Source: Anaeramoeba ignava BMAN
Lineage: Eukaryota; Protista; Anaeramoebae
Direction of reading: 5' to 3'
Length of the DNA stretch: 64,000 nt
Assembly (NCBI GenBank): GCA_028826165.1
Contig: JAPDFW010000083.1
Span: 186,001-250,000, forward strand
Shown: positions 14,704 to 60,057 of the stretch, in pieces
Layout of the letters: each line of letters starts with the position of its first letter
Position numbering within the stretch: the first letter of the stretch is position 1
Program-made: the position numbers and the translations under genes
Notes under the pieces: generated by a model
Databases searched by the model: none
The model's input: only the letters and a program-made list of their open reading frames with translations
Told to the model about the DNA's origin: nothing

Positions 14704-17700
14704 ATGTTAAATTATTCTTTACCTCCTGTTCCAAATTCTCTCACAAAATTCGATTTATATTCAACATCAGAAAAATTTTATATTGTTGGTTATGATAAAT
14801 CTAAAACTAAATATCAATTTTTAAAGATTGATAGACAAAAAAATTCTGAAGATCCTTTAAATATTGTTGAAGATAAAACTCTTTATACAAAACAAGAAGC
14901 TTATACTGTTTTATCATGGGTTTCTCAAGGAAATAAATCTTCATTTAAAAAAGTGATGGATTTTTGCGCAATTATTGGTGATTTTCCTTTTTATTTATTT
15001 AAATGAAAAAAAAAAGAATAAAAAATTTTTTTATAATTTTTTGGATAATTTTTTTTACAGGTTTTATAAGTTTATTAGAAGGTTATTATCTCATGGTTAT
15101 TAGAAAGTAAATTTAATTATTAAAATTAAAATTCATTTATAAAATTAAAATTAAAATTAAAATTAAAATTAAAATTAAAATTCATTTAAAATTAAAATTA
15201 AAATTAAAATTAAAATTAAAATTAAAATTAAAATTAAAATTAAAATCAAAAATTAAAATTAAAATTAAAATTAAAATTAAAATTAAAATTAAAATTAAAA
15301 TTAAAATTAAAATTAAAATTAAAATTAAAATTAAAATTAAATTTAAAATTAAAATTAAAATTCAAAATTCTTAGACGTAAAAAAGTTGGTTCTATTGGTG
15401 GACATAATATCTATACAATTAAAGAAATAGCAGATATACCACTTTTTCCAGACAATTTACCAACAATTAATAAAAATGAATCAAAATACAAATCAATACT
15501 TGCGATGCTTGATTTAACAAAAGGATTTTTCTTTTCATATTCATTTGATCTTTCAAACACACTCCAATTTAATATGAATAAAAATAATCACGTTAAAGAA
15601 GAACAAGAAGAACAAAATAATCAAGAATATTCAGGATTTCAAGAATCAAAAAAATGTGAAATGTTTATTTGGAATAGCTTTTTATTAAAGCCTTATTTTA
15701 AATTTGTTAAAAATTGGAAATGGGTTGTTCCATTAATTTATGGTTCTTTTCAACATCATCATATCCTTTATTCAAAATGATTATTTATATTTTTTAATTT
15801 TATTTGGTTTTTTATTTATTTATTTATTTAATTAATTTTCTTTGACTTTTTGATTTTCTTTATTTTTATTTTTATTTTTACGTCTTTCTTTTGTTGGAAG
15901 ACCAATTGATTTGATTTTAATTGCGAGAAGATCTCAATTTTATGCTGGAACTAGATTTTTGAAAAGAGGTGCAAATGAATTAGGACATGCAGCAAATCAT
16001 GTTGAAGTTGAACAAATTGTTTTAGATGCCTCTTCTATTTCTCAATTAACTGGTTTGAATATTGAATTGAATTGAATTAAATATTAAATTGAATATTAAA
16101 TTGAATATTAAATTAAATATTAAATTGAATATTGAATATTGAATATTAAATTGAATATTGAATTGAATATTGAATTGAATTAAATTGAACATTGAATTGA
16201 TTTGATTAAATTGAATATTGAATTGAATTGAATATTAAATTGAATATTAAATTAAATATTGAATTGAATTGAATATTAAATTGAATATTGAATATTAATT
16301 TGAATATTTAATTGGATTTGATATATTTTTTTTATTAGGTGATTTTACTTCGGTTGTTCAAATAAGAGGTTCTATTCCTTTATTTTGGTCACAAGATTTT
16401 AGTGTTTTATCACCAAAACCTGCAATTTTTGGTAATAAAATAAAAATAAAAGATAAAAATAAAAAATTAAATTAAAATAAAAATAAAAAATAATTAGTTA
16501 CAAGATGGGATCCATATTATTTAGCAGCAAAAAGACATTTCGCAAATTTATTTACTCGGCATGGAGAACCAGTTGTAGTTCTAAATTTAATTAAACAACA
16601 AGAAAAAAATCCAAGAGAATCCATTTTAGGAAAAGAATTTGAGAAAGCAATAGAACATTTAAATCAGTCACTAACCAAAGAATTTGAAATTGATTATATT
16701 GCAAAAGATATTTCAAATTTTCAGAAAAATAACAAATCAGGTATCCGAAAAATTTTAGCTGAAATTTCAGATCAAGTTGTTCAAAAAATTGGATTTTTTC
16801 ACAGTGCAAAACAATTACAAAATGATGAACAATATGATTGCAGATTGCAAACAGGTGTTCTTAGGAGTAATTGTATTGATAGTTTAGATAGGACTAATGT
16901 TGCTCAATTTTTTTATGGTTGGGTTGCACTTGGTTATCAATTACATTCATTAAGTACACTAATAATTTTTGAAAACTCAAAATATTCAAAAATATTTAAA
17001 AAATAATATTTAAAAAAATATTTAAAATAATATTTAAAAAAATATTTAAAATAATATTCAAAATAATATTTAAAATAATATTTAAAATAATATTTAAAAA
17101 TATTTAAAAATAATATTTAAAAAAATATTCAAAATAATATTTAAAATAATATTCAAAATAATATTCAAAAATAATATTTAAAAAATATTTCAAAAATATT
17201 TAAAATAATATTTAAAAAAAATATTTAAAAATATTTAAAAAATATTTAAAAATAATATTTAAAATAATATTTAAAAAAATATTTAAAAAATATTTAAAAA
17301 TATTCAAAAATATTTAAAAATAATATTTAAAAATATTTAAAAAAATATTCAAAAAAATATTAAAAATATTTAAAAATATTTTAAAAAATATTTAAAATAA
17401 TATTCAAAAATATCCAAAAATATTTAAAAAAAATATTTAAAAATATTTAAAAATATTTAAAAATATTCAAAAATATTTAAAAATATTCAAAAATATTCAA
17501 AAAAATATTCAAAAATATTTAAAAAATAATATTTAAAAATAATATTTAAAAAAATATTTAAAAATATTTAAAATAATATTTAAAATAATATTTAAAATAA
17601 TATTTAAAAATATTTAAAATAATATTTAAAAATATTTAAAAATAAAAATATTTAAAAATATTCAAAAATATTTAAAAATATTTCAAAAATATTCAAAAAA

Positions 17701-19622: not shown

Positions 19623-22023
19623 TTATTTTTGATTTTTTAATGGTAAGTGAATTTTATTTATATTTTTATTTAGATTATTATTTATATTTTTATTTATATC
19701 ATTATTTAGATTTTTATTTATATTTTTATTTATATTTTTATTTAGATTTTTATTTATATTTTTATTTAGATTTTTATTTAGATTTTTATTTACATTTTTA
19801 TTTATATTTTTATTTATATTTTTATTTATATTTTTATTTATATTTTTATTTATATTTTTATTTAGATTTTTATTTATATTTTTATTTAGATTTTTATTTA
19901 GATTTTTATTTAGATTTTTATTTAGATTTTTATTTAGATTTTTATTTATATCTTTATTTGTATTTTTATTTATATTTTTATTTATATTTTTATTTATATT
20001 TTTATTTATATTTTTATTTGTATTTTTATTTATATTTTTATTTAGATCTTTATTTGGATTTTTATTTATATTTTTATTTAGATTTTTATTTATATTTTTA
20101 TTTAGATTTTTATTTAGATTTTTATTTACATTTTTATTTGGATTTTTATTTACATTTTTAATTGGATTTTTATTTACATTTTTAATTGGATTTGGAACTG
20201 ATTGATTTTCTCTTTCTTTCAATTTTTCAATCTCTTCTTTATTTTGGATTTCAAAAATTTGATTTTCTACAATTTTATCTCTTAACTGATGATTAAGATT
20301 CTCAATTTTTTTTCTTTCTCTTTCTAATCTTGAAGTGATTGAACGAATTTTGAAATCAAAAGAAATTTTTGTTTCGGTAAATTTTTGCAAAAAATTGTTA
20401 TAATTCTCTTCTTGATTTCCCAATTTTTTTGATTTGGATAAAAATCTTTCTTTGAGATTTGATTCAAGAACCAATTTTTCTTTTGAAAGAGAAGAAATTT
20501 TTTGATTTAAAAGATTAAGAGAATTTTTTTTGGAAATGAGTTCTTTTTTTGCTTGATCAAGTTGATTAAGAGAATCCAAAAAATCTTGTTCGACATTTTG
20601 AAAATTTTGAATATGATTTTCTAAACGAGAAAGTGTTTGAGATTGAAATAAATTGGAATTTCTTGAAATAAAAAATTGGCAAGATTTCAAAGTTTGGAAA
20701 GAAATGGAATTCAATGATAAATCAAGAAACAAAAGGGAATAATTCAACATCAACTCAGTTGCAATTTTAGAAGCAGTTGAATTGGAGAGAAGATTATTTT
20801 TCAAATTCAAATATTTGATATTAGAATTATAAGCGATTAAATCAGATAAATTACAATTTTGATCAGTGATTTTGCAGTTTGCAATATTTAGATGAATAAT
20901 TGAAGTATTTTCAAGTAATCCATTTACTAAGAAATTGGCTCCTTTCATTTCAAGATGATTTCCTTCAAGATCCAATAATTGGAGAGTTTGGTTTGTTTTT
21001 AAGGATTTGCAAAAATTAAGGAAAGAAGAATTTGGATGAATATTATTATTTTTCAAAATCAATGATTTAACATGAATCGAAGCCAAATTTGAAATGCAAG
21101 AATCAAGGATTTTTGAGGAAGAAAAATCAATCATTTTCAACGTTTTATTTTGAGCCAAAGCGCTTGATATCTCCTTGATATCTCCAAGGTTATTTCTGCC
21201 TATTTTGAGCACTTGAAGTGAATTTACTTCGCGGATTAGATTTGCAATAAAAGGGTTTGCATTTGAAGAAATGAAATTTTGTTCCACATTTAAATTCTCC
21301 AACAAAATATTTGCTTTTTGGAAAGCTTGAATGATTCCTTTTGCTAACGAAATGAATCCTTTTGACTGCATTTTGTTGTTTGAAAGATCAATTTGAATTA
21401 AAGGGGAATTCCATTTTCGTTTTTTAAAAGTAGAAGAAATGAGTTTGATTGCTTTTTCATTTAAAGAAGATCGAGTCAATTCAAGTGAAACTAAAACGGA
21501 ATTTTTTTTCAATAACAATTTTTTCAAGGATAATAAAGATTGAGGAGTAAAAATATTTGAGGAAATGTTTAAAAAAGTGATTGAATTGTTTTTGATTATT
21601 GATTCAATTATTTCTTTCATTTCTTTTCTAAATTCGCAATTGCTTAAATTTAAACTATTTATTTTGCTTGATTTCTCGATTAATTTGCAAATTGATTTGG
21701 ATTTCTTAATTGGATTTGTTGAAAAATTGACAGCATAAAAATTCTCTTTTTCAAGAAGAAATTCTGTCACTTTTTCAATTGCTTTTTCTCCAAATAAACA
21801 ATCTTTAATGTTAAAAATCCCATTTTTTGTTCTATTTTGAATGTTTTTGAAAAATTGAGGAAAACGTGGATCATTTTTCAATGTTTTTAGTCCCAAATCC
21901 TTATTCAAAAAAAAAGAGAGAAAACAATTTTATTCCAATTTTTAATTTCAATTTTTAATTTGGATTTGTTTTTACTTCATTTTTTGCTAAAAAAAATGTT
22001 TTTGCTTCTTCTTGTGTAATCAT
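19623..22023 (-). CDS. Leucine-rich repeat (RNI-like) protein with coiled coil and NKN(L/I) repeat tail
   Basis: Repeated LxxLxLxxNxI motifs. Exon 1 MITQEEAKTFFLAKNE is joined by a GT-AG intron to the ORF ending at 19623. Confidence 0.8.
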
Positions 22024-22142
22024 TTTTGAAAAGAAAAAAATGAAAAAGAAAAATTTGGATTTAAAACAAAAAAAGATCACAAAGAAAAGAAAAGAAAAGA
22101 AAAAAAATAAATGACTTTGATTTAAAAAAAATTTTAACAATA

Positions 22143-22307
22143 AAAATTTGAGTTGATGTATTTCGAACCCCTTTTAACCAAGATTAAAAGGAATTTTAAT
22201 TTAAAAATTCCTCAATTTTATCAATAATGAGCATAACCCACTATTTAATAAAATTTTGAATGAGGATTTTCAAATTAAAAATTACAAAATACATCAACTC
22301 AAATTTT
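22143..22307 (-). other. Structured element with a perfect 21-bp terminal inverted repeat (candidate ncRNA or MITE-like element)
   Basis: aaaatttgagttgatgtattt (22143-22163) pairs with aaatacatcaactcaaatttt (22287-22307). Internal hairpin ccttttaa/ttaaaagg (22170-22191) plus further nested stems. Confidence 0.55.
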
Positions 22308-22345
22308 ATTTTTAAAATAATTTTCTATTTATATATACTTTTTTA

Positions 22346-24250
22346 AATAATAAATTTAATTAAATTTTTATTAATAATTTTAAATAGTTTTAATTTATAA
22401 TTTATTTATAATTTATTTTTAAATTTAATTTTATTAATTATTTTATTATTTAATATAAATTAATATTATTAAAAAATTAGATAAAAAATTAATAATAAAT
22501 TTAATCAAATTTTTATTAATAATTTTAAATAGTTTTAATTTATAATTTATTTATAATTTATTTTTAAATTTAATTTATTAATTATTTTATTATTTAGTAT
22601 AAATTAATATTATTAAAAATTAGATAAAAATTAATAATAAATTTAATCAAATTTTTAATAATAATTTTAAATAATTTTAATTTATAATTTATTTATAATT
22701 TATTTTTAAATTTAATTTTATTAAGTATTTTATTATTTAGTATAAATTAATATTATTAAAAATTAGATAAAAATTAATAATAAATTTAATTAAATTTTAA
22801 TAATAATTTTAATTTATAATTTATTTATAATTTATTTATAATTTATTTATAAATTTAATTTTATTAATTATTTTATTATTTAGTATAAATTAATATTATT
22901 AAAAAATTAGATAAAAAATAAATAATAAATTTAATTAAATTTTTAATAATAATTTTAAATAGTTTTAATTTATAATTTATTTATAATTTATTTTTAAATT
23001 TAATTTTATTAATTATTTTATTATTTAAATATAAATTAATATTATTAAAAATTAGATAAAAATTAATAATAAATTTAATTAAATTTTTAATAATAATTTT
23101 AAATAATTTTAATTTATAATTTATTTATAATTTATTTATAATTTATTTATAAATTTAATTTTATTAATTATTTTATTATTTAATATAAATTAATATTATT
23201 AAAAATTAGATAAAAAATTAATAATAAATTTAATTAAATTTTTAATAATAATTTTAAATAGTTTTAATTTATAATTTATTTATAATTTATTTTTAAATTT
23301 AATTTTATTAATTATTTTATTATTTAGTATAAATTAATATTATTAAAAAATTAGATAAAAATTAATAATAAATTTAACCAAATTTTTATTAATAATTTTA
23401 AATAGTTTTAATTTATAATTTATTTATAATTTATTTTTAAATTTAATATTATTAATTATTTTATTATTTAATATAAATTATTATTATTAAAAATTAGATA
23501 AAAAATTAAATAATAAATTTAATCAAATTTTTAATAATAATTTTAAATAGTTTTAATTTATAATTTATTTATAATTTATTTATAAATTTAATTTTATTAA
23601 TTATTTTATTATTTAGTATAAATTAATATTATTAAAAATTAAATAAAAATTAATAATAAATTTAATTAAATTTTTATTAATAATTTTAAATAATTTTAAT
23701 TTATAATTTATTTATAATTTATTTTTAAATTTAATTTTATTAATTATTTTATTATTTAATATAAATTAATATTATTAAAAAATTTGATAAAAAATTAAAT
23801 AATAAATTTAATTAAATTTTTAATAATAATTTTAAATAGTTTTAATTTATAATTTATTTATAATTTATTTTTAAATTTAATTTTATTAATTATTTTATTG
23901 TTTAAATATAAATTAATATTATTAAAAATTAGATAAAAAAATTAATAATAAATTTAATTAAATTTTTAATAATAATTTTAAATAGTTTTAATTTATAATT
24001 TATTTATAATTTTATTTTTAAATTTAATTTATTAAGTATTTTATTATTTAATATAAATTAATATTATTAAAAAATTTGATAAAAAATCAATAATAAATTT
24101 AATTAAATTTTTAATAATAATTTTAAATAGTTTTAATTTATAATTTATTTATAATTTATTTTTAAATTTAATTTTATTAAGTATTTTATTATTAAATATA
24201 AATTATTATTATTAAAAAATTTGATAAAAAATAAATAATAAATTTAATTA
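22346..24250. repeat. Tandem satellite, ~143-bp almost pure-AT unit (block 1, ~13 copies)
   Basis: The marker tagataaaaa recurs at 22478, 22621, 22764, 22908 and onward. Confidence 0.92.
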
Positions 24251-24270
24251 AAGAAAAATAAAATAAACAA

Positions 24271-24384
24271 AAAATTGAGCTAATATATTTGAACATTCTT
24301 TAATTATAAGATAATCCTTCTAGACGAACCCAATTTGAGTTAAAGAGATATAAGGAAATAAGTAAAAATATATTAATAATTTTT
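24271..24384. other. Diverged second copy of the structured element interrupting the satellite
   Basis: aaaattgagctaatatatttgaacattctttaa resembles aaaatttgagttgatgtatttcgaaccccttttaa. taatatattt (24281-24290) pairs with aaatatatta (24366-24375), and there is an inner tctttaa/ttaaaga stem. Confidence 0.45.
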
Positions 24385-24419
24385 AAAATTTTTCTTTATT
24401 TATATTTTGAAATATTTAT

Positions 24420-26160
24420 TTATAATTTATTTTTAAATTTAATTTTATTAATTATTTTATTATTTAATATAAATTAATATTATTAAAAATTAGATAAAAA
24501 TTAATAATAAATTTAATTAAATTTTTATTAATAATTTTAAATAGTTTTTAATTTATAATTTATTTATAATTTATTTTTAAATTTAATTTTATTAATTATT
24601 TTATTATTTAATATAAATTAATATTATTAAAAATTAGATAAAAATTAAATAATAAATTTAATTAAATTTTTATTAATAATTTTAAATAGTTTTAATTTAT
24701 AATTTATTTATAATTTATTTTTAAATTTAATTTTATTAATTATTTTATTATTTAATATAAATTAATATTATTAAAAATTTGATAAAAAATTAATAATAAA
24801 TTTAATTAAATTTTTAATAATAATTTTAAATAATTTTTAATTTATAATTTATTTATAATTTATTTTTAAATTTAATTTTATTAATTATTTTATTATTTAA
24901 TATAAATTAATATTATTAAAAATTTGATAAAAATTAATAATAAATTTAATTAAATTTTTAATAATAATTTTAAATAGTTTTAATTTATAATTTATTTATA
25001 ATTTATTTTTAAATTTAATTTTATTAAGTATTTTATTATTTAATATAAATTAATATTATTAAAAATTAGATAAAAAATTAATAATAAATTTAATTAAATT
25101 TTTATTAATAATTTTAAATAGTTTTAATTTATAATTTATTTATAATTTATTTTTAAATTTAATTTTATTAATTATTTTATTATTTAATATAAATTAATAT
25201 TATTAAAAATTAGATAAAAATTAATAATAAATTTTAATTAAATTTTTAATAATAATTTTAAATAATTTTAATTTATAATTTATTTATAATTTATTTTTAA
25301 ATTTAATTTTATTAATTATTTTATTATTTAATATAAATTAATATTATTAAAAATTTGATAAAAATAAATAATAAATTTAATTAAATTTTTAATAATAATT
25401 TTAAATAGTTTTAATTTATAATTTATTTATAATTTATTTATAATTTAATTTTATTAATTATTTTATTATTTAATATAAATTAATATTATTAAAAATTTGA
25501 TAAAAATAAATAATAAATTTAATTAAATTTTTAATAATAATTTTAAATAATTTTAATTTATAATTTATTTATAATTTATTTTTAAATTTAATTTTATTAA
25601 TTATTTTATTATTTAATATAAATTAATATTATTAAAAATTTGATAAAAAATTAATAATAAATTTAATTAAATTTTTAATAATAATTTTAAATAATTTTAA
25701 TTTATAATTTATTTATAATTTATTTTTAAATTTAATTTTTATTAATTATTTTATTGTTTAGTATAAATTAATATTATTAAAAAATTAGATAAAAATTAAA
25801 TAATAAATTTAATTAAATTTTTAATAATAATTTTAAATAGTTTTAATTTATAATTTATTTATAATTTATTTTTAAATTTAATTTTATTAATTATTTTATT
25901 ATTTAATATAAATTATTATTATTAAAAATTTGATAAAAATTAATAATAATTTTAATTAAATTTTTATTAATAATTTTAAATAGTTTTAATTTATAATTTA
26001 TTTATAATTTATTTTTAAATTTAATTTTATTAATTATTTTATTATTTAATATAAATTATTATTATTAAAAAATTAGATAAAAAATTAATAATAAATTTAA
26101 TTAAATTTTTAATAATAATTTTAAATATTTTTAATTTATATTTTATTTATATTTATTTTT
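24420..26160. repeat. Tandem satellite, same ~143-bp unit (block 2, ~12 copies)
   Basis: Same monomer as block 1. Confidence 0.92.
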
Positions 26161-47845: not shown

Positions 47846-48151
47846 TTTTATTTTAAATTAATTTAATTAAAAAAAATGAAAAAAAAAAAGGAGAAAAATA
47901 AAAAATAAATAAAAAATAAAAAATAAAAATAAAAAAAGAAGAAAAAATAAAAACGTTAAAAAAGAAAAATTAAAATTTAAATTAAATTTAAATTAGATTT
48001 TATTTTAATTTTAAATTAGATTTTGGATTTGGAATTAAAAAAAAAAGAAAAAAAAAAAAAAAAAAATTTTCAAAACAAAAACAACAAAAATCATTTTTTT
48101 TCTTTTTTTAAAAAAAAAAAACAAATTTAAAAATTATTTTAATTTTTAATA

Positions 48152-51100
48152 ATGTGTTTCAACCAACCAACATCTTTAGTTTTCACAATTTTAGGTATAA
48201 TAACATCAATATTTCTACGAAAAGCAAAATTTCTGCAAAAAGATAGAAGAATTTGGAGAATTTACGTTGGACTTGATTATTTTACAGCAATGGAATTACT
48301 TCAATTTTTTCAGTATTTTTGGATTGAAGAACCAGATCGTTTTATGAATAAATTTCTGACATGGATAGCCATTTTACACATTTCATTCCAACCTTTTTTC
48401 TCGAATTTAATGGCGAGTTATGACATTAAGAAAAGTCTCCAAAAATCATTTGATGTTTTTGTTATGCCTTTAAGTATGGTAACTGGGATTTTCTTAAGTT
48501 CTCGGATGTTAATTTTCCCAGAACATATGTGCAATTCCAAAATGGATCCGTTATGCGGAAATACAACACAGACAACAATGGGTGTTGTGCATTTGAAGTG
48601 GGTCTGTAGACTTCGCGCTCCTAATTATTTCACGCCAAGTGCTTTTGCTCATTTCTTTTTTATGTTTATATCCCCCTTTCTTTCCGGCAATGCTCTTTCT
48701 GCCATTTTGCTTTTTATTACCGGTCCAACTTTCGGTTATTTGCTTTCACGAAATAAGGATGAGTGGGCTTCCATTTGGTGCTTCTATTCTATTGGTCAGT
48801 CTATTTGTGGCATCTTGTTGTCTTTGTATGGCTATTCTCGAAGAAAAACTAAATTTTATTTGGATTCAAAAATTGCTCAATTGAACGAATTTCAAGAACA
48901 GAAACAAATTGATGAAAAGTCAAAAGGAAAACCAAAAGGAAAACCAAAAGGAAAACCAAAAGGAAAACCAAAAGGAAATCAACAAAGGAAAGCAAAACGA
49001 AATCAAAGAAAAAAGAAAAAACAGACCGTTGAAAAAAAGAAAACAAAACTTGTTGTTAAGCAAACTGATGAAAAATTAAAACCAAAAGAAATTGATGAAA
49101 AATCAAAAGAAACAAAAGATAAACAATCAAAAGAAACAAAAGATGAAAAACCAAAAGAAATTAAGGATAAACAATCAAAAGAAACAAAAACAAAAACAAA
49201 AGATGAACAACCAAAAGAAATAAAAGATGAACAAACAAAAGATGAACAAACAAAAGAAATAAAAGATGAACAATCAAAAGAAACAAAAGATAAACAACCA
49301 AAAGAAACAGAAATAAAATCAAAAGAAACAAAAGATAAACAACCAAAAGAAACAAAAGATGAACAACCAAAAGAAACAAAAGATAAACAATCAAAAGAAA
49401 TAAAAGATGAACAAACAAAAGAAACAAAAGATAAACAATCAAAAGAAACAGAAACAAAAGATGAACAAACAAAAGAAATAAAAGATGAACAATCAAAAGA
49501 AATAAAAGATGAACAATCAAAAGAAATAAAAGATCAACAATCAAAAGAAACAGAAATAAAAGATGAACAAACAAAAGAAATAAAAGATGAACAATCAAAA
49601 GAAATAAAAGATCAACAATCAAAAGAAACAGAAATAAAATCAAAAGAAATAAAAGATGAACAAACAAAAGAAATAAAAGATGAAAAATCAAAAGAAACAA
49701 AAGATGAACAATCAAAAGAAATAAAAGATGAACAATCAAAAGAAACAGAAATAAAATCAAAAGAAACAAAAGATGAACAAACAAAAGAAATAAAAGATGA
49801 ACAATCAAAAGAAACAGAAATAAAATCAAAAGAAACAGAAATAAAAGATGAACAACCAAAAGAAATTAAGGATAAACAATCAAAAGAAACAGAAACAAAA
49901 GATGAACAAACAAAAGAAATAAAAGATGAACAAACAAAAGAAATAAAAGATGAACAATCAAAAGAAACAAAAGATAAACAACCAAAAGAAACAGAAATAA
50001 AATCAAAAGAAACAAAAGATGAACAACCAAAAGAAACAAAAGATGAACAAACAAAAGAAACAGAAATAAAATCAAAAGAAACAGAAATAAAATCAAAAGA
50101 AACAAAAGATGAACAAACAAAAGAAACAAAAGATGAACAACCAAAAGAAACAAAAGATAAACAATCAAAAGAAATAAAAGATGAACAATCAAAAGAAACA
50201 GAAATAAAATCAAAAGAAACAAAAGATGAACAAACAAAAGAAACAAAAGATGAACAAACAAAAGAAACAGAAATAAAATCAAAAGAAACAGAAATAAAAT
50301 CAAAAGAAACAAAAGATAAACAACCAAAAGAAATAAAAGATAAACAATCAAAAGAAACAGAAATAAAATCAAAAGAAATAAAAGATGAACAACCAAAAGA
50401 AACAAAAGATGAACAACCAAAAGAAACAAAAACAAAAGATAAACAATCAAAAGAAATAAAAGATGAACAATCAAAAGAAACAGAAATAAAATCAAAAGAA
50501 ACAGAAATAAAAGATGAACAAACAAAAGAAACAGAAATAAAATCAAAAGAAACAAAAGATAAACAAACAAAAGAAACAAAAGATGAACAAACAAAAGAAA
50601 CAGAAATAAAATCAAAAGAAACAAAAACAAAAGATGAACAAACAAAAGAAACAAAAGATGAACAAACAAAAGAAACAGAAACAAAAGATGAAAAAACAAA
50701 AGAAACAAAAGATGAAGAAATCAAAAAAAGAAAAAAAGATAAAAACAAAACAAAAGAAAACAAAAGAAACAAAAGATGAACAACAAAAAAAACAGAAATA
50801 AAAGATGAACAAACAAAAGAAACAGAAATAAAATCAAAAGAAATAAAATCAAAAGAAACAAAAGATAAACAAACAAAAGAAACAAAAGATGAACAACCAA
50901 AAGAAACAGAAATAAAATCAAAAGAAACAAAAGATGAACAAACAAAAGAAACAAAAGATGAACAAACCAAAAGAAACAAAAGATAAACAACCAAAAGAAA
51001 CAAAAGATGAAAAAACAAAAGAAACAAAAGATAAACAACCAAAAGAAACAAAAGATGAACAAACAAAAGAAACAAAAGATAAACAACCAAAAGAAACAGA

Positions 51101-54100
51101 AATAAAATCAAAAGAAACAAAAGATAAACAAACAAAAGAAACAAAAGAAATAAACAAAAAAAAAAAACAAAAGATGAACAAACAAAAGAAACAAAAGATG
51201 AACAAACAAAAGATGAACAAACAAAAGAAACAGAAATAAAATCAAAAGAAACAAAAGATAAACAAACAAAAGAAACAAAAGATAAACAAACAAAAGAAAC
51301 AAAAGATGAAAAATCAAAAGAAACAAAAGATGAACAATCAAAAGAAACAAAAGATGAACAACCAAAAGAAACAAAAACAAAAGATGAACAACCAAAAGAA
51401 ACAAAAGATGAACAAACAAAAGAAACAGAAATAAAATCAAAAGAAACAGAAACAAAAGATAAACAAACAAAAGAAACAAAAGATGAACAACCAAAAGAAA
51501 TAAAAGATAAACAATCAAAAGAAACAAAAACAAAAGATGAACAAACAAAAGAAACAGAAATAAAATCAAAAGAAACAAAAGATAAACAAACAAAAGAAAC
51601 AAAAGATGAACAACCAAAAGAAATAAAATCAAAAGAAACAAAAGATAAACAATCAAAAGAAACAAAAGATAAACAACCAAAAGAAACAAAAGAAATAAAA
51701 GATGAAAAATCAAAAGAAACAGAAATAAAATCAAAAGAAACAAAAGATGAACAAACAAAAGAAACAAAAGATAAACAAACAAAAGAAACAGAAATAAAAT
51801 CAAAAGAAATAAAAGATGAACAAACAAAAGAAATAAAAGATGAAAAATCAAAAGAAACAAAAGATGAACAAACAAAAGAAAAAAAGGATGAACAACCAAA
51901 AGAAACAAAAGATGAACAAACAAAAGAAACAGAAATAAAATCAAAAGAAACAGAAATAAAATCAAAAGAAACAAAAGATGAACAAACAAAAGAAACAAAA
52001 GATCAACAATCAAAAGAAACAGAAATAAAATCAAAAGAAATAGAAATAAAATCAAAAGAAACAAAAGATGAACAAACAAAAGAAACAAAAGATGAACAAA
52101 CAAAAGAAACAGAAACAAAAAAAAAAAAAAAACAGAAATAAAAACAAAAGAAACAAAAGATGAACAAACAAAAGAAACAAAAGATGAACAACCAAAAGAA
52201 ACAAAAGATGAACAAACAAAAGAAACAGAAATAAAATCAAAAGAAACAGAAATAAAATCAAAAGAAACAAAAGATGAACAAACAAAAGAAATAAAAGATG
52301 AAACAAAAAAAAAAAAATAAACAAAAAAAAAAAAAAAAAACAAAAAAGAAACAGAAATAAAATCAAAAGAAACAAAAGATGAACAAACAAAAGAAACAAA
52401 AGATGAACAAACAAAAGAAATAAAAGATGAACAACCAAAAGAAACAAAAGATAAACAACCAAAAGAAACAAAAGATAAACAACCAAAAGAAACAAAAGAT
52501 AAACAAACAAAAGAAACAGAAATAAAATCAAAAGAAACAGAAATAAAATCAAAAGAAACAAAAGATGAACAAACAAAAGAAACAAAAGATGAACAACCAA
52601 AAGAAATAAAAGATGAACAAACAAAAGAAACAGAAATAAAATCAAAAGAAACAAAAAACAAAAGATGAAACAAACAAAAAACAAAAAGAAACAAAAAGAT
52701 GAACAAACAAAAGAAATTAAGGATAAACAATCAAAAGAAATAAAAGATGAACAATCAAAAGAAATAAAAGATGAACAACCAAAAGAAATAAAAGATGAAC
52801 AAACAAAAGAAACAGAAATAAAATCAAAAGAAACAGAAATAAAATCAAAAGAAACAAAAGATGAACAACCAAAAGAAACAAAAGATGAACAAACAAAAGA
52901 AACAGAAATAAAATCAAAAGAAACAGAAATAAAATCAAAAGAAACAAAAGATGAACAAACAAAAGAAACAAAAGATGAACAAACCAAAAGAAACAGAAAT
53001 AAAATCAAAAGAAACAGAAATAAAATCAAAAGAAACAAAAGATGAACAAACCAAAAGAAACAAAAGATGAACAATCAAAAGAAACAGAAATAAAATCAAA
53101 AGAAACAAAAGATGAAAAACCAAAAGAAACAAAAGATCAACAAACAAAAGAAACAAAAGATAAACAATCAAAAGAAACAAAAGATGAAAAACCAAAAGAA
53201 ACAAAAAAAAAAAGATAAACAAACAAAAAAAAAAAGATAAACAAACAAAAGAAACAAAAGATGAAAAATCAAAAGAAACAAAAGATGAACAACCAAAAGA
53301 AACAAAAGATAAACAACCAAAAGAAACAGAAATAAAATCAAAAGAAACAAAAAAAAAAAAAAGAAAAACAAAAAGAAACAAAAGATGAACAACCAAAAGA
53401 AACAAAAGATAAACAACCAAAAGAAACAGAAATAAAATCAAAAGAAACAAAAGATAAACAACCAAAAGAAATAAAAGATGAACAACCAAAAGAAATAAAA
53501 GATAAACAATCAAAAGAAACAAAAGATCAACAATCAAAAGAAATAAAATCAAAAGAAACAAAAGATGAACAATCAAAAGAAACAAAAGATGAAAAACCAA
53601 AAGAAACAAAAGATCAACAAACAAAAGAAACAAAAGATAAACAAACAAAAGAAACAAAAGATGAACAACCAAAAGAAATAAAAGATAAACAATCAAAAGA
53701 AACAAAAGATCAACAAACAAAAGAAACAAAAGATAAACAAACAAAAGAAACAAAAGATGAACAATCAAAAGAAACAAAAGATAAACAACCAAAAGAAATA
53801 AAAGATGAACAATCAAAAGAAATAAAAGATGAACAAACAAAAAAAACAAAAGATAAACAATCAAAAGAAATAAAAGATGAACAATCAAAAGAAATAAAAT
53901 CAAAAGAAACAAAAGAAATAAAAGATGAACAAACAAAAGAAATTAAGGATAAACAACCAAAAGAAACAAAAGATGAACAACCAAAAGAAACAAAAACAAA
54001 AGATGAACAAACAAAAGAAATAAAAGATGAACAACCAAAAGAAATAAAAGATGAACAAACAAAAGAAACAGAAACAAAAGATGAACAACCAAAAGAAACA

Positions 54101-57100
54101 AAAACAAAAGATGAACAACCAAAAGAAATAAAAGATAAACAAACAAAAGAAACAAAAGATAAACAACCAAAAGAAACAGAAATAAAATCAAAAGAAACAG
54201 AAATAAAAGATAAACAACCAAAAGAAATAAAAGATGAACAACCAAAAGAAACAAAAGATGAACAACCAAAAGAAACAAAAGATAAACAACCAAAAGAAAC
54301 AAAAGATGAAAAATTAAAATTAAAAGAAAAAGAAAATAAAGAGGCAAATGAAAAAAACAAAAATCAAGAAAATCAACCATTCAAAAGATCGGGTCTTTTA
54401 AAAAGAGACCAGAAAAACCAAAAAATTTGGAACAAAAAACTTCACCAAATGAAAATATACCTTCATATTCACTCCCATTCAAAATTCGACAAATTCAAAC
54501 AAAAGTAAGCGTTGATACAATAGAAATCAAATGGAAAATGCCGGAGAATAAAGGAGAAATTGAAAAATATGAGATTGAATTAAATGATAAATTTTTCTGT
54601 GAAACAAAAGAAAATCACCTCATTATTGATAACTTAAATCACAGCCAAGAATATTCATTAAGAGTAAGAGTATCGATCCAAAATAAAGGGATAAGTAATT
54701 GGAGTGACATAATCACAGTTAAAACAAAAACACCAGTTCCTGGAATCATCAATGATATCCAATACAAGTTCAGAGGACATGATGTGTTGTTGACTTGGAA
54801 ACAACCAACTCATTCAGATTTAGAGGGAACAAAATATCAAGTTCAAATCAATTCTTCTGAAACTGTTGAATCAAAAATATACGAAAGAATGCAAACTAAA
54901 TATATGCATAAAGGCTTAAAAGTAGGAGTAACATACACAGCAAAGATAAGAACAATTAACAATATCACATCAAGCGATTGGTCTCCTGAGATTAAGTTCC
55001 AAATTCCAAAGAATCGTCCTGAGCAAATTGTCAATACAAAATATCAAGATTTATCCTTAACTTGGGCGCCACCTGAATCTCATGGATTACAAATCCAAAA
55101 ATATCAAATCAGAATTCCAAATCATAGAACAATTTCAACAGTTGGCAATCGTGCTTATTTAAGAAACGTTCCATCTGGGAAACATCAAGCCAAAGTTCGA
55201 GCAATTACTGAAGCAGGACCAGGACCTTGGAGTGAAGAAACAAGTAATTTGATTTGATATTTAATTTTATATTTAATTTTATATTTAATTTAATATTTAA
55301 TTTAATATTTAATTTAATTTTATATTTAATTTAATATTTAATTTAATATTTAATTTTATATTTAATTTAATATTTAATTTAATATTTAATTTAATATTTA
55401 ATTTTATATTTAATTTAATATTTAATTTTATATTTAATTTAATATTTAATTTAATATTTAATTTAATATTTAATTTAATATTTAATTTTATATTTAATTT
55501 AATATTTAATTTTATATTTAATTTTATATTTAATTTAATATTTAATTTAATATTTAATTTTATATTTAATTTAATATTTAATTTAATATTTAATTTAATA
55601 TTTAATTTTATATTTAATTTAATATTTAATTTTATATTTAATTTTATATTTAATTTAATATTTAATTTAATATTTAATATTTAATTTAATTTAATATTTA
55701 ATTTAATATTTAATTTAATATTTAATTTAATATTTAATTTAATATTTAATTTTATATTTATTTTTAATATTTAATTTAATATTTAATTTAATATTTAATT
55801 TTATATTTAATATTTATTTTAAAATAGCTTTCGATATTCCTTTAGAAAAATCTCATGTATTTACAAAAGAAAAATATCAAAGTGCTTTACAAAGAATGCA
55901 AAGCTTTTTGTTAGAAAATAACCTAGATGTTGAAATCCAAGGAGAATATACTCCAGGACAGTTTAAATGTGAAATTGATGGAAAATCTTTGAATTTTAAA
56001 ACTGTTGAAGGTTTTTTTCCAAAATTTTTTAAAAAAAAAAGAAAATTTATTAATTTTTTATTATAAAAACCAAATAATTAATTTTGATAAATAGTTACTG
56101 AATTTGTTCGAGTTGGAGGTGGTTATTTAAGATTTGAGGAATATGTGAAAAAACATTTAAAACCAAATTTAAAATTTGTTAAAACAAAAGGAGTTGGTGT
56201 TGGATTTTTATCAGGAGGAGAAAATAAAACAAAAACACTTAATCAAAAAGCTCCAAAATCAAAAACAACAGAAAAAAAACAAAAAACAACATCAACAACT
56301 TCATCACAACAATCAAAAACAACAGCAAAAAAACCAAAAACAACATCAACATCAACAACAATGAATAATCAAAGAAGAAAAAATTTAGAAAAATATTTGG
56401 TTGATGAAAAACTACAAACAAATCAAGATCTAGAAAAGGAAAGATCAAAAAGTAAAACTGAAAAAATATCAGAAGATTTAACCGATGAAAAAAATTCTGA
56501 ATCAATAAACTTAGTTGATAAACAACATTTAGAAAATGAAATAATTGATGAACAAGAAATAATCGATGAGCAAGAAATAATTGATGAAATAAGTGATGAA
56601 CAGGAAATAACAGATGAAATAAGTGATGAATTAACCGATGAATTAACCGATAATAAAGAAATTATTGAGAATCGAATTGAGGATAAAAAATCAAAAGATG
56701 AATTAAACAAAGAAGAATCAAACAAAGATAATTTAAAGAAAGATGAAATAAACAAAGATGATTTAAAGAAAGATGAAATAAAGAAAGATGAAATAAAGAA
56801 AGATCAAAAATCAAAGGATGAAAAACCAAAAGAAGAATTAAAGAAAAATGAATTAAAGAAAGAAGAATTAAACAAAGATGAATTAAACAAAGATGAAAAA
56901 CCAAAAGAAGATTTAAAGAAAAATGAAAAATCAAAAGAAGAAATAAAGAAAGATGAATTAAACAAAGATGAAAAACCAAAAGAAGATTTAAACAAAGATC
57001 AAAAACCAAAAGAAGAATTAAACAAAGATCAAAAACCAAAAGAAGAATTAAACAAAGATCAAAAACAAAAAGAAGAATTAAAGAAAGATGAATTAAACAA

Positions 57101-60057
57101 AGATGAAAAACCAAAAGATGAATTAAAGAAAGAAGAATTAAACAAAGATCAAAAACCAAAAGAAGAATTAAAGAAAGATGAATTAAACAAAGATGAAAAA
57201 CTAAAAGATGAAATAAAGAAAGATGAATTAAAGAAAGATGAAATAAACAAAGATGATTTAAAGAAAGATGAAATAAACAAAGATGAATTAAACAAAGATC
57301 AAAAACCAAAAGATGAATTAAAGAAAGATGAAAAACCAAAAAATGAATTAAAGAAAGATGATTTAAAGAAAGATGAATTAAACAAAGATGAATTAAACAA
57401 AGATGAAAAATTAAAAGAAGATTTAAAGAAAGATGAATTAAAGAAAGATGAATTAAAGAAAGAAGAATTAAAGAAAGATGAATTAAACAAAGATGAATTA
57501 AACAAAGATGAAAAACCAAAAGAAGATTTAAAGAAAAATGAAAAATCAAAAGAAGAAATAAAGAAAGATGAATTAAAGAAAGATCAAAAACCAAAAGATG
57601 AATTAAAGAAAGATCAAAAATCAAAAGATGAAATAAAGAAAGATCAAAAATCAAAGGATGAAAAACCAAAAGATGAATTAAACAAAGATGAATTAAACAA
57701 AGATGAAAAACCAAAAGAAGAATTAAAGAAAGATGAATTAAAGAAAGAAGAATTAAAGAAAGATGAAATAAAGAAAGATGAAATAAACAAAGATGAATTA
57801 AAGAAAGATGAATTAAAGAAAGAAGAATTAAAGAAAGATGAATTAAACAAAGATGAAAAACCAAAAGAAGATTTAAACAAAGATCAAAAACCAAAAGAAG
57901 AATTAAACAAAGATCAAAAACAAAAAGAAGATTTAAAGAAAGATGAATTAAACAAAGATGAAAAACCAAAAGATGAATTAAAGAAAGAAGAATTAAACAA
58001 AGATCAAAAACCAAAAGAAGAATTAAAGAAAGATGAATTAAACAAAGATGAAAAACCAAAAGATGAAATAAAGAAAGATGAATTAAAGAAAGATGAAATA
58101 AACAAAGATGATTTAAAGAAAGATGAAATAAAGAAAGATGAAATAAACAAAGATGAATTAAACAAAGATCAAAAACCAAAAGATGAATTAAAGAAAGATG
58201 AAAAACCAAAAGATGAAATAAAGAAAGATGAAAAACCAAAAGAAGAAATAAAGAAAGATGAATTAAAGAAAGATGAAAAACCAAAAGAAGAAATAAAGAA
58301 AGATCAAAAACCAAAAGATGAAATAAAGAAAGATGAAAAACCAAAAGATGAAATAAAGAAAGATCAAAAACCAAAAGATGAATTAAAGAAAGATGAAAAA
58401 CCAAAAGATGAATTAAAGAAAGATGAAAAACCAAAAGAAGAATTAAAGAAAGATCAAAAACCAAAAGAAGATTTAAAGAAAGATGAAAAACCAAAAGAAG
58501 AAATAAAGAAAGATCAAAAATCAAAAGATGAATTAAACAAAGATCAAAAACCAAAAGAAGAAATAAAGAAAGATGAATTAAAGAAAGAAGAATTAAAGAA
58601 AGATGAATTAAAGAAAAACACAACAAAAAAGCGGAAAAAATCAAAGTAGAAAACCACAACTAACAAAAGATCAAATAAATAATTTGAATAGTCAAAGAAA
58701 ACCAATTAAAAAACCAATCATAAATAAATTAACTAAAAAAAATGGACAAACTGGAAAAGAAACAAAACCAAAATTAAATAAAAAACCAATTAAAAAAGAA
58801 CAAGAACCAAAATCAACCAAAAATAATAAAGCAAATCAAGTTCTTAATAATCAAAGGAAATTAGTGAAAAAAGTATTAAAACCACAAGATCCAACAAAAA
58901 AAACTACTCGAGATATAAATGGAAAAAAGAAAACTATTCGTGTAGTAAAATCAACAGATAAAAAAGTAAAACCAATATCTGAAGATGAAAAAAAAGAAAA
59001 AGAGAAAATTTCCAAATTAGTAAAAACTAATTCAATCAAAAGAGGAAACAGTGTAAATTTAAGTTCTTCAAAAACAAAGGAATCGAATCAATTAAATAAA
59101 ACTCATCCAAAACAAACAATTAAAACAACCAAAAATAATTCAAAATCAACAAAAAATTCAAAATCAACTGAAAATGCAAATCAAAATCAAAATCAAAATC
59201 AAAATAAAAAAAAAGATACAAATGAAAAATCAACTGAAAATGAAAAAACAACTCAAAATCAAAATGATAGATTAAATAATAATAAAGAAAGACATAAAAG
59301 ATCAAAAAGTAAACATCCAAAAAAAGCAAATGAAAAATCAACTGAAAAATCAAATGAAAAATCAAATGATAAATTAAATGAAAAATCAAATGAAAAATCA
59401 AATGAAAAATCAAATGATAAATTAAATGATAAATTAAATGAAAAATCAAATGATAAATCAAATGAAAAATCAAATCAAAATGAAAAATCAAATGAAAAAG
59501 CAAATGAAAAAGCAAATGAAAAATCAAATGAAAAAACAAATCAAAATCAAAATCAAAATGAAAAATTAAATGATAGATTAAATGATAGATTAAATGAGAA
59601 TGATAAAGAAAGACGTCAAAGATCAAAAAGTAAACTTAGAGCACCTAAAATAACTACAAAACATTTAAAAGATTTAAATCAAAAAAAGAATCAAAAAAAT
59701 CAAAATGAAAAATTAAATGAAAAATCAAATCAATCACAAGATTTAAATCAAAATGATAAATTAAATGAAAAATCAAATCAATCACAAGATTTAAATCAAG
59801 ATCAAAAAAAACAAAAAGAAAAGTCAACTGAAAAAACAACTGAAAAATCAAATCAATCACAAGATTTAAATCAAGATCAAAATCAATCACAAAATGAAAA
59901 AGAAACAAAAAAAGAAAATCAAAATCAAAATCAAAAAGAAAATCAAAATCAAAATCAAAATCAAAATCAAAATCAAAATGAAAATCAAAAAGAAAATCAA
60001 AATGAAAAAGAAAAAGAAACAAAAAATGAAAAATTAAATGAAAATGATGAAAAATAA
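48152..60057 (+). CDS. Predicted giant protein: DUF5765-like multi-pass membrane domain + KETKDEQ repeats + 3 FN3 + GAR/GAS2 domain + KKDE(L/I) repeats + basic tail
   Basis: ORFs 48152-50779, 54427-55257, 56145-58649 and 58684-60057 are linked by single-base homopolymer frameshifts and by introns 55244-55827 and 56011-56094, with no intergenic-type sequence between them. GAR motif FVRVGGGYLRFEEYVKKH. Confidence 0.6.
54405..55243 (+). CDS. Fibronectin type III domains (x3) within the giant gene
   Basis: IKWKMP...YEIE...LNHSQEYSLRVR...SNWS; LTWKQP...YQVQ...LKVGVTYTAKIR...SDWS; LTWAPP...VRAITEAGPGPWS. Confidence 0.9.

What the first reader, a model, noticed from the sequence alone, without database searches (positions are those of the whole stretch)
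15761..15881. U12-type AT-AC intron in FIG4: evidence for a minor spliceosome in this protist
Seen: the FIG4 frame stops at 15780 unless 121 nt are removed. The segment begins ATATCCTTT, contains TTTCTTTGAC about 35 nt from its end and ends TTTTAC. Excision joins C(15760) to GT(15882-15883) to give ...[37 protein letters not shown], the expected SAC-domain sequence. Every other intron I traced in the window is GT-AG. Established: RTATCCTT, a TCCTTRAC-like branch site and AC are the signature of introns spliced by the U11/U12/U4atac/U6atac spliceosome; well-studied metamonads (Giardia, Trichomonas) are generally regarded as lacking that machinery. Inference: if this is a metamonad such as Anaeramoeba, it retains a minor-spliceosome system in a lineage where one is not expected.
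Basis: partly seen in the sequence, partly recalled or inferred. Interest (0 to 1): 0.9.

Follow-up and report, generated by a model that had tools for sequence, protein, structure and literature searches.

The report
Minor-class intron in Anaeramoeba FIG4
This is a real, spliced intron of the rare 'minor' class in an anaerobic amoeba; the genome paper's supplement already reported such introns and inferred the second splicing machine, and this check adds candidate parts of that machine and a branch-site motif the paper said was absent.

Summary
Confirmed: 15761-15881 is a 121-nt AT-AC intron in FIG4. A spliced contig matches up to 15760 and resumes 121 nt later. The genome is Anaeramoeba ignava BMAN (size and scaffold count match exactly). 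The headline is already published: the supplement of PMC11550330 lists 33 AT-AC introns and infers a minor spliceosome. This scan also noted such introns on other DNA of this genome (ATG9, TOPBP1, UBE2W, ACTR10).

Added here: (1) candidate machinery: U6atac (separate from a canonical U6), a weaker U11, and Pfam hits above cut-off for PDCD7/59K, SNRNP25 and CENATAC; (2) a branch motif TTYYTTGAY in seven frame-restoring AT-AC introns, 13-43 nt from the 3' end, against the paper's 'no conserved branch point' (two further candidates lack it); (3) the same codon and phase carry a U12-type intron in pufferfish and U2-type introns in a sponge, a sea anemone and a fungus, so the intron is ancient. U12, U4atac, 48K, SCNM1 and CRIPT were not found; 65K was not tested. 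Verdict: real and ancient, mostly known.

The parts
15761..15881 (+). U12-type AT-AC intron, 121 nt, phase 1 (third intron of FIG4)
   Evidence: Sequence; 121-nt skip in spliced contig; frame check
15761..15769 (+). U12-type 5' splice site ATATCCTTT
   Evidence: predicted pairing with the AAAGGA of the U11 and U6atac candidates
15837..15846 (+). Predicted branch site TTTCTTTGAC, branch A at 15845 (-37)
   Evidence: Single copy in the intron; same motif class in six other AT-AC introns; not mapped by lariat reads
15847..15881 (+). U-rich spacer without AC or AG, then 3' splice site AC at 15880-15881
15778..15780 (+). In-frame TGA read if the intron is retained, upstream of the catalytic CX5R motif
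15375..15760 (+). FIG4 exon 3 (upstream exon, SAC domain)
   Evidence: PF02383 E 1.4e-18; best PDB hit FIG4; covered by the spliced contig from 15380
15882..16052 (+). FIG4 exon 4 (downstream exon)
   Evidence: PF02383 E 1.8e-16; best PDB hit FIG4 E 1.3e-12
14704..14977 (+). FIG4 exon 1 (predicted)
   Evidence: Open frame and GT donor
15061..15106 (+). FIG4 exon 2 (predicted)
   Evidence: Phase continuity
16339..16431 (+). FIG4 exon 5
   Evidence: Start seen as the continuation of the spliced contig
16498..16953 (+). FIG4 exon 6 with the CX5R catalytic motif; the gene continues downstream, not fully traced
   Evidence: PF02383

Best explanation
An ancestral U12-type intron removed by a separate, retained minor spliceosome. 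Shown: the intron is excised at AT and AC; the genome has a U6atac-like gene besides a canonical U6 and U4, a U11-like gene, and three minor-specific protein families. Inferred from the established pathway: U11 (AAAGGA) pairs with the 5' splice site, U12 pairs with the TTCTTTGAC branch site (one G-U wobble against the canonical TTCCTTRAC), U6atac replaces U11 and forms the catalytic centre, and the first AC at a workable distance after the branch A is used as acceptor. Retention would cut FIG4 off before its catalytic motif.
For: Spliced contig. U6atac candidate G000:C71:58882-58994, 29.9 bits, E 2.7e-4, with AAGGAGAGA box, AGC triad and an internal stem-loop with an AU bulge, intergenic. Canonical U6 elsewhere, 88 bits, and U4. 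U11 candidate C1:50977-51083 with 5' AAAGGA, a four-way junction seen in 2 of 400 shuffles and an AUCAA loop. PDCD7 49.2 bits, SNRNP25-type Ubiquitin_4 57.1 bits, CENATAC 37.7 bits, all over cut-off. ATATCCTTT before an AT run: 39 forward-strand sites against 2 for the reversed pattern. Branch motif in 7 introns against 2 of 138 proxy major 3' ends. Same position is U12-type in Takifugu. Published counts.
Against: U12 and U4atac not found by Rfam or by seven pattern searches. Both snRNA candidates score under Rfam's gathering cut-off, and U11 has E 0.21. 48K, SCNM1, CRIPT and a second DIM1 paralogue (TXNL4B) not found. 65K, 35K, 31K, 20K and ZRSR2 untested. The SNRNP25 and CENATAC loci could not be cut out and checked. 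No snRNA expression data.
Confidence: 0.88

Rival explanations
1. Hybrid or reduced machine: U11 and U6atac work with the major U2 and/or U4, or with a U12 and U4atac too changed to recognise.
For: U12 and U4atac not found in any search; several minor proteins not found; hybrid-looking snRNAs are described in Giardia (PMC6679479).
Against: The searches scored only 42-50 of thousands of candidates in an 80% AT genome, so absence is not shown. The U4 gene's 5' end has the major U4 pattern. The branch motif fits U12-type pairing and is rare at major-type 3' ends.
Confidence: 0.08
2. The minor machinery is vestigial and a tolerant major spliceosome removes these introns, as proposed for the Giardia AT-AC intron.
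For: Two candidate AT-AC introns (L052, L056) lack the branch motif; the genome paper saw no conserved branch site; A. flamelloides has no AT-AC introns on record.
Against: The full 9-nt U12 5' motif and a U12-type branch motif are kept across unrelated genes; intact-looking U6atac, U11 and proteins exist; conversion to major introns normally erases these signals, as at this position in sponge, anemone and fungus.
Confidence: 0.03
3. Artefact: assembly error, or a different junction.
For: The joint row itself was dropped by the repeat filter, and the run type is unrecorded.
Against: Exact 121-nt skip; same codon and phase in four distant genomes; dozens of like sites.
Confidence: 0.01

Closest known systems
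U12-type introns of A. ignava BMAN in the genome paper's supplement (PMC11550330, Suppl. Note 1, Table S3B)
   Same: Same genome, same class, same inference of a minor spliceosome. This intron is very likely one of the 27 AT-AC introns with the motif; the paper gives no list to confirm it.
   Different: The paper names no snRNA or protein component and states that no branch point is conserved. Here a TTYYTTGAY motif is found in seven introns.
FIG4 minor intron of vertebrates (Takifugu bimaculatus, L121; human FIG4 is listed as a minor-intron gene in PMC7507305)
   Same: Same codon and phase 1; U12-type 5' site and branch site in Takifugu.
   Different: GT-AG subtype, 795 nt, branch site about 15 nt from the end; here AT-AC, 121 nt, -37.
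Canonical U11/U12/U4atac/U6atac minor spliceosome (Rfam RF00548, RF00007, RF00618, RF00619)
   Same: U6atac and U11 functional motifs; PDCD7, SNRNP25, CENATAC families.
   Different: Candidates are AT-rich and under cut-off; U12, U4atac, 48K, SCNM1, CRIPT not found.
Blastocystis ST1 minor introns (PMC10639083)
   Same: Anaerobic protist with mostly AT-AC minor introns (77% there; 27 of 32 here).
   Different: Hundreds of introns in a stramenopile, against about 30 annotated here.
Giardia AT-AC intron and hybrid snRNAs (PMC6679479)
   Same: Metamonad with AT-AC ends.
   Different: Giardia and Spironucleus introns match U2-type consensus and no 65K or minor snRNA was found there; here U6 and U6atac are separate genes.

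Membership tests
U12-type intron | 5' splice site RTATCCTT | tested here: met
   ATATCCTTT at 15761
U12-type intron | Branch site like TTCCTTRAY | tested here: met
   TTCTTTGAC, one wobble position off; shared by six other introns. By sequence only
U12-type intron | Branch site close to the 3' end (about 10-20 nt in model species; own knowledge) | tested here: not met
   -37 here; -13, -15, -26, -37, -42, -43 in the others. A tendency, not an absolute rule
U12-type intron | Excised from mRNA at the predicted ends | tested here: met
   121-nt skip starting at 15761 in a spliced contig
U12-type intron | Orthologous position is a minor intron elsewhere | tested here: met
   Takifugu, same codon and phase
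U12-type intron | Splicing depends on minor snRNPs | not testable with these tools
   Needs knock-down or pull-down
Minor spliceosome | U6atac separate from U6 | tested here: met
   29.9 bits against a cut-off of 33, E 2.7e-4
Minor spliceosome | U11 snRNA | tested here: inconclusive
   26 bits, E 0.21; right motifs and fold. Probable
Minor spliceosome | U12 snRNA | tested here: inconclusive
   Not found; searches not exhaustive; one look-alike rejected
Minor spliceosome | U4atac snRNA | tested here: inconclusive
   Rfam hit is the major U4; pattern search negative
Minor spliceosome | PDCD7/59K, SNRNP25, CENATAC | tested here: met
   Pfam over cut-off; PDCD7 best PDB hit is PDCD7, E 0.036; the other two not checked by reciprocal search
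Minor spliceosome | SNRNP48, SCNM1, CRIPT, TXNL4B | tested here: inconclusive
   No match; short models, intron-blind search
Minor spliceosome | RNPC3/65K, SNRNP35, ZCRB1, ZMAT5, ZRSR2 | not tested
   No specific family model or referenced query was at hand
FIG4/SAC3 phosphatase | SAC domain with CX5R; FIG4 closer than SAC1 | tested here: met
   no tree built

The most novel reading that the evidence does not exclude
A. ignava runs a reduced or remodelled minor spliceosome, the first with identified components in a metamonad: U11 and U6atac are kept, U12 and U4atac are changed beyond recognition or replaced, and acceptors are chosen by scanning to the first AC from a branch site up to 43 nt away.
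Probability: 0.15. Interest if true: 0.65.

Novelty: already known. Interest (0 to 1): 0.3.

Why it matters
A minor spliceosome in Anaeramoeba means the metamonad ancestor had one and that diplomonads, and apparently other metamonads, lost it later. That conclusion already stands, though only in a supplementary note; a full-text search for 'Anaeramoeba' with 'minor spliceosome' finds no main text, and the pan-eukaryotic survey PMC10639083 does not mention metamonads. [quoted passage not shown] The genus also offers a gradient: mostly AT-AC in A. ignava, only GT-AG in A. flamelloides, 22 introns in all in A. pumila.

Tried and rejected
U4atac Rfam hit (C95:129927) is the major U4. U12 look-alike at C58:307398, minus strand (L030): 20.3 bits and an Sm site in place, but it lies antisense to a coding exon of an ankyrin-DHHC gene, its branch-pairing segment GUAAAUA cannot pair with the C of the observed motif, and its E-value scaled to the genome is about 1.5 (my scaling); rejected. 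My first U12 pattern had a spacing error, corrected. Twenty further U12 pattern hits gave nothing in Rfam. A GC-rich site at C103:128641 lacks the helix Ia partner. The branch-plus-AC genome pattern did not discriminate (201 against 135). L021 is coding and L022 has no open upstream frame. The homologue search with one exon was blank because of the length filter. No paper gave the human FIG4 exon boundary. Runs X1-X23 share only 5-6% of words, probably low-complexity matches, and were not used. No human contig was fetched.

Full report
Observation. The segment 15761-15881 is 121 nt and 10% GC, begins ATATCCTTT, carries TTTCTTTGAC at 15837-15846 and ends TTTTAC. Read through, the frame stops at TGA 15778-15780. 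The exons on either side match the SAC domain and have FIG4 as best solved-structure hit. With exons at 14704-14977, 15061-15106, 15375-15760, 15882-16052, 16339-16431 and 16498-16953 the phases run on without a stop to the CX5R motif, and the other five introns traced are GT-AG.

Transcript evidence. One public run held 44% of the words of the region, about the exon share. Its single contig matches 15380-15760 at record positions 324-704 and 15890-16054 at 713-877, a net skip of 121 nt that starts at 15761, and continues into the exon at 16341, so it is spliced. The tool dropped the joint row at a repeat and did not show the eight letters 15882-15889, and the run's type is not on record. No GT or AG nearby could give this junction.

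Organism and prior knowledge. The window's assembly has 42,843,398 bases in 147 contigs, identical to Table S1 for Anaeramoeba ignava BMAN in PMC11550330. Supplementary Note 1 of that paper reports 33 AT-AC introns among 32,108, 32 introns starting (G/A)TATCCTTT of which 27 are AT-AC, 8 and 10 GT-AG motif introns in the two A. flamelloides strains, and concludes that this strongly suggests a minor spliceosome. It also says no branch point is conserved and names no component. Other first-stage notes of this scan report AT-AC introns in ATG9, TOPBP1, UBE2W and ACTR10 of the same genome.

Machinery. A U6atac candidate lies at G000:C71:58882-58994 (29.9 bits, E 2.7e-4). It has the AAGGAGAGA box, the AGC triad, an internal stem-loop with an AU bulge, a U run at about 1635 of L001, and stops in all six frames. 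A canonical U6 (88 bits) and a U4 are separate genes, so this is not a Giardia-like hybrid U6. A U11 candidate at C1:50977-51083 is weak by score (26 bits, E 0.21) but has a 5' AAAGGA complementary to the splice site, an AUCAA loop and a four-way junction found in 2 of 400 shuffles. PDCD7 (C76:310988-311749), SNRNP25-type Ubiquitin_4 (C116:13470-13739) and CENATAC (C64:1364446-1364661) pass their Pfam cut-offs; the PDCD7 frame's best PDB hit is PDCD7. U12 and U4atac were not found by Rfam or by patterns, nor were 48K, SCNM1, CRIPT or a second DIM1. These searches score few candidates and ignore introns, so they do not show absence. 65K and the other RRM proteins were not tested.

Branch site. 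ATATCCTTT followed by a 22-nt AT run occurs 39 times on the forward strand against 2 for the reversed pattern. Of 20 sites examined, six were frame-restoring AT-AC introns with one copy each of TTYYTTGAY, in two PGAP3/Per1 paralogues, a mucolipin, TOPBP1, an ankyrin-DHHC gene and ORC3. Two more candidates with open upstream frames (L052, L056) lack the motif, and the rest did not model as introns. The motif was in 2 of 138 proxy major 3' ends. The motif was defined after seeing these introns and the ends were chosen by frame and composition without transcript data, so the P-value printed there is too small; the enrichment is still large, and the motif is the canonical TTCCTTRAY with one wobble. 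The branch A lies 13-43 nt from the end, beyond 25 nt in five of seven, which may be why the paper missed it (inference). In six of seven the acceptor is the first AC or AG after the motif; in the seventh an AC 5 nt after the motif is skipped. That suggests scanning (inference).

Ancestry. Aligning the downstream exon alone to homologues and mapping their introns, the same codon and phase 1 carry a U12-type GT-AG intron in Takifugu bimaculatus and U2-type GT-AG introns in Nematostella, Corticium and Paraglomus. Sinapis and Riccia have a U2-type intron 4 nt upstream, a different position. Human FIG4 is listed as a minor-intron gene (PMC7507305); I did not check its position. The simplest reading is an ancestral minor intron kept in Anaeramoeba and a vertebrate and converted to the major class several times.

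Verdict. The intron is real, U12-type and ancient, and is most likely removed by a retained minor spliceosome (0.88). The lineage-level claim is already in print, so novelty is 'already known' and interest 0.3. The residual value is the component genes, the branch-site correction and the open question of the missing U12 and U4atac.

Noticed in passing
L003:1509-1648 (G000:C95): Major U4 snRNA gene, 39.7 bits, with an Sm site containing a C (AAUUUCUGG); 49% GC in 7-12% GC flanks.
   Followed up: partly
G000:C70:323239-323347, minus strand: Canonical U6 snRNA gene, 88 bits; one match found.
   Followed up: no
L036 and L070: Two PGAP3/Per1 paralogues carry an AT-AC intron at the same Pfam position and phase (245 and 104 nt), so it predates their duplication.
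   Followed up: partly
L056:1501 onwards: ATATCCTTT intron candidate of about 565 nt, almost pure A/T, in a TPR gene, without the branch motif.
   Followed up: partly
L030:1426-1524, minus strand (G000:C58): U12-like 5' end and Sm site antisense to a coding exon of an ankyrin-DHHC gene; judged chance.
   Followed up: yes
G000: 39 motif-plus-AT-run sites on one strand suggest up to about 75 in all; about a third of those examined modelled as introns, close to the published 27-33.
   Followed up: partly
L116 and L117: Plant FIG4/SAC genes have an intron 4 nt upstream of the position shared by Anaeramoeba and opisthokonts: a possible shift on conversion.
   Followed up: no
window 48001-60000 and 22001-26000: Strong A-over-T skew (up to 0.84 at 50001-54000) and a 4-kb stretch under 5% GC; probably simple repeats.
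   Followed up: no
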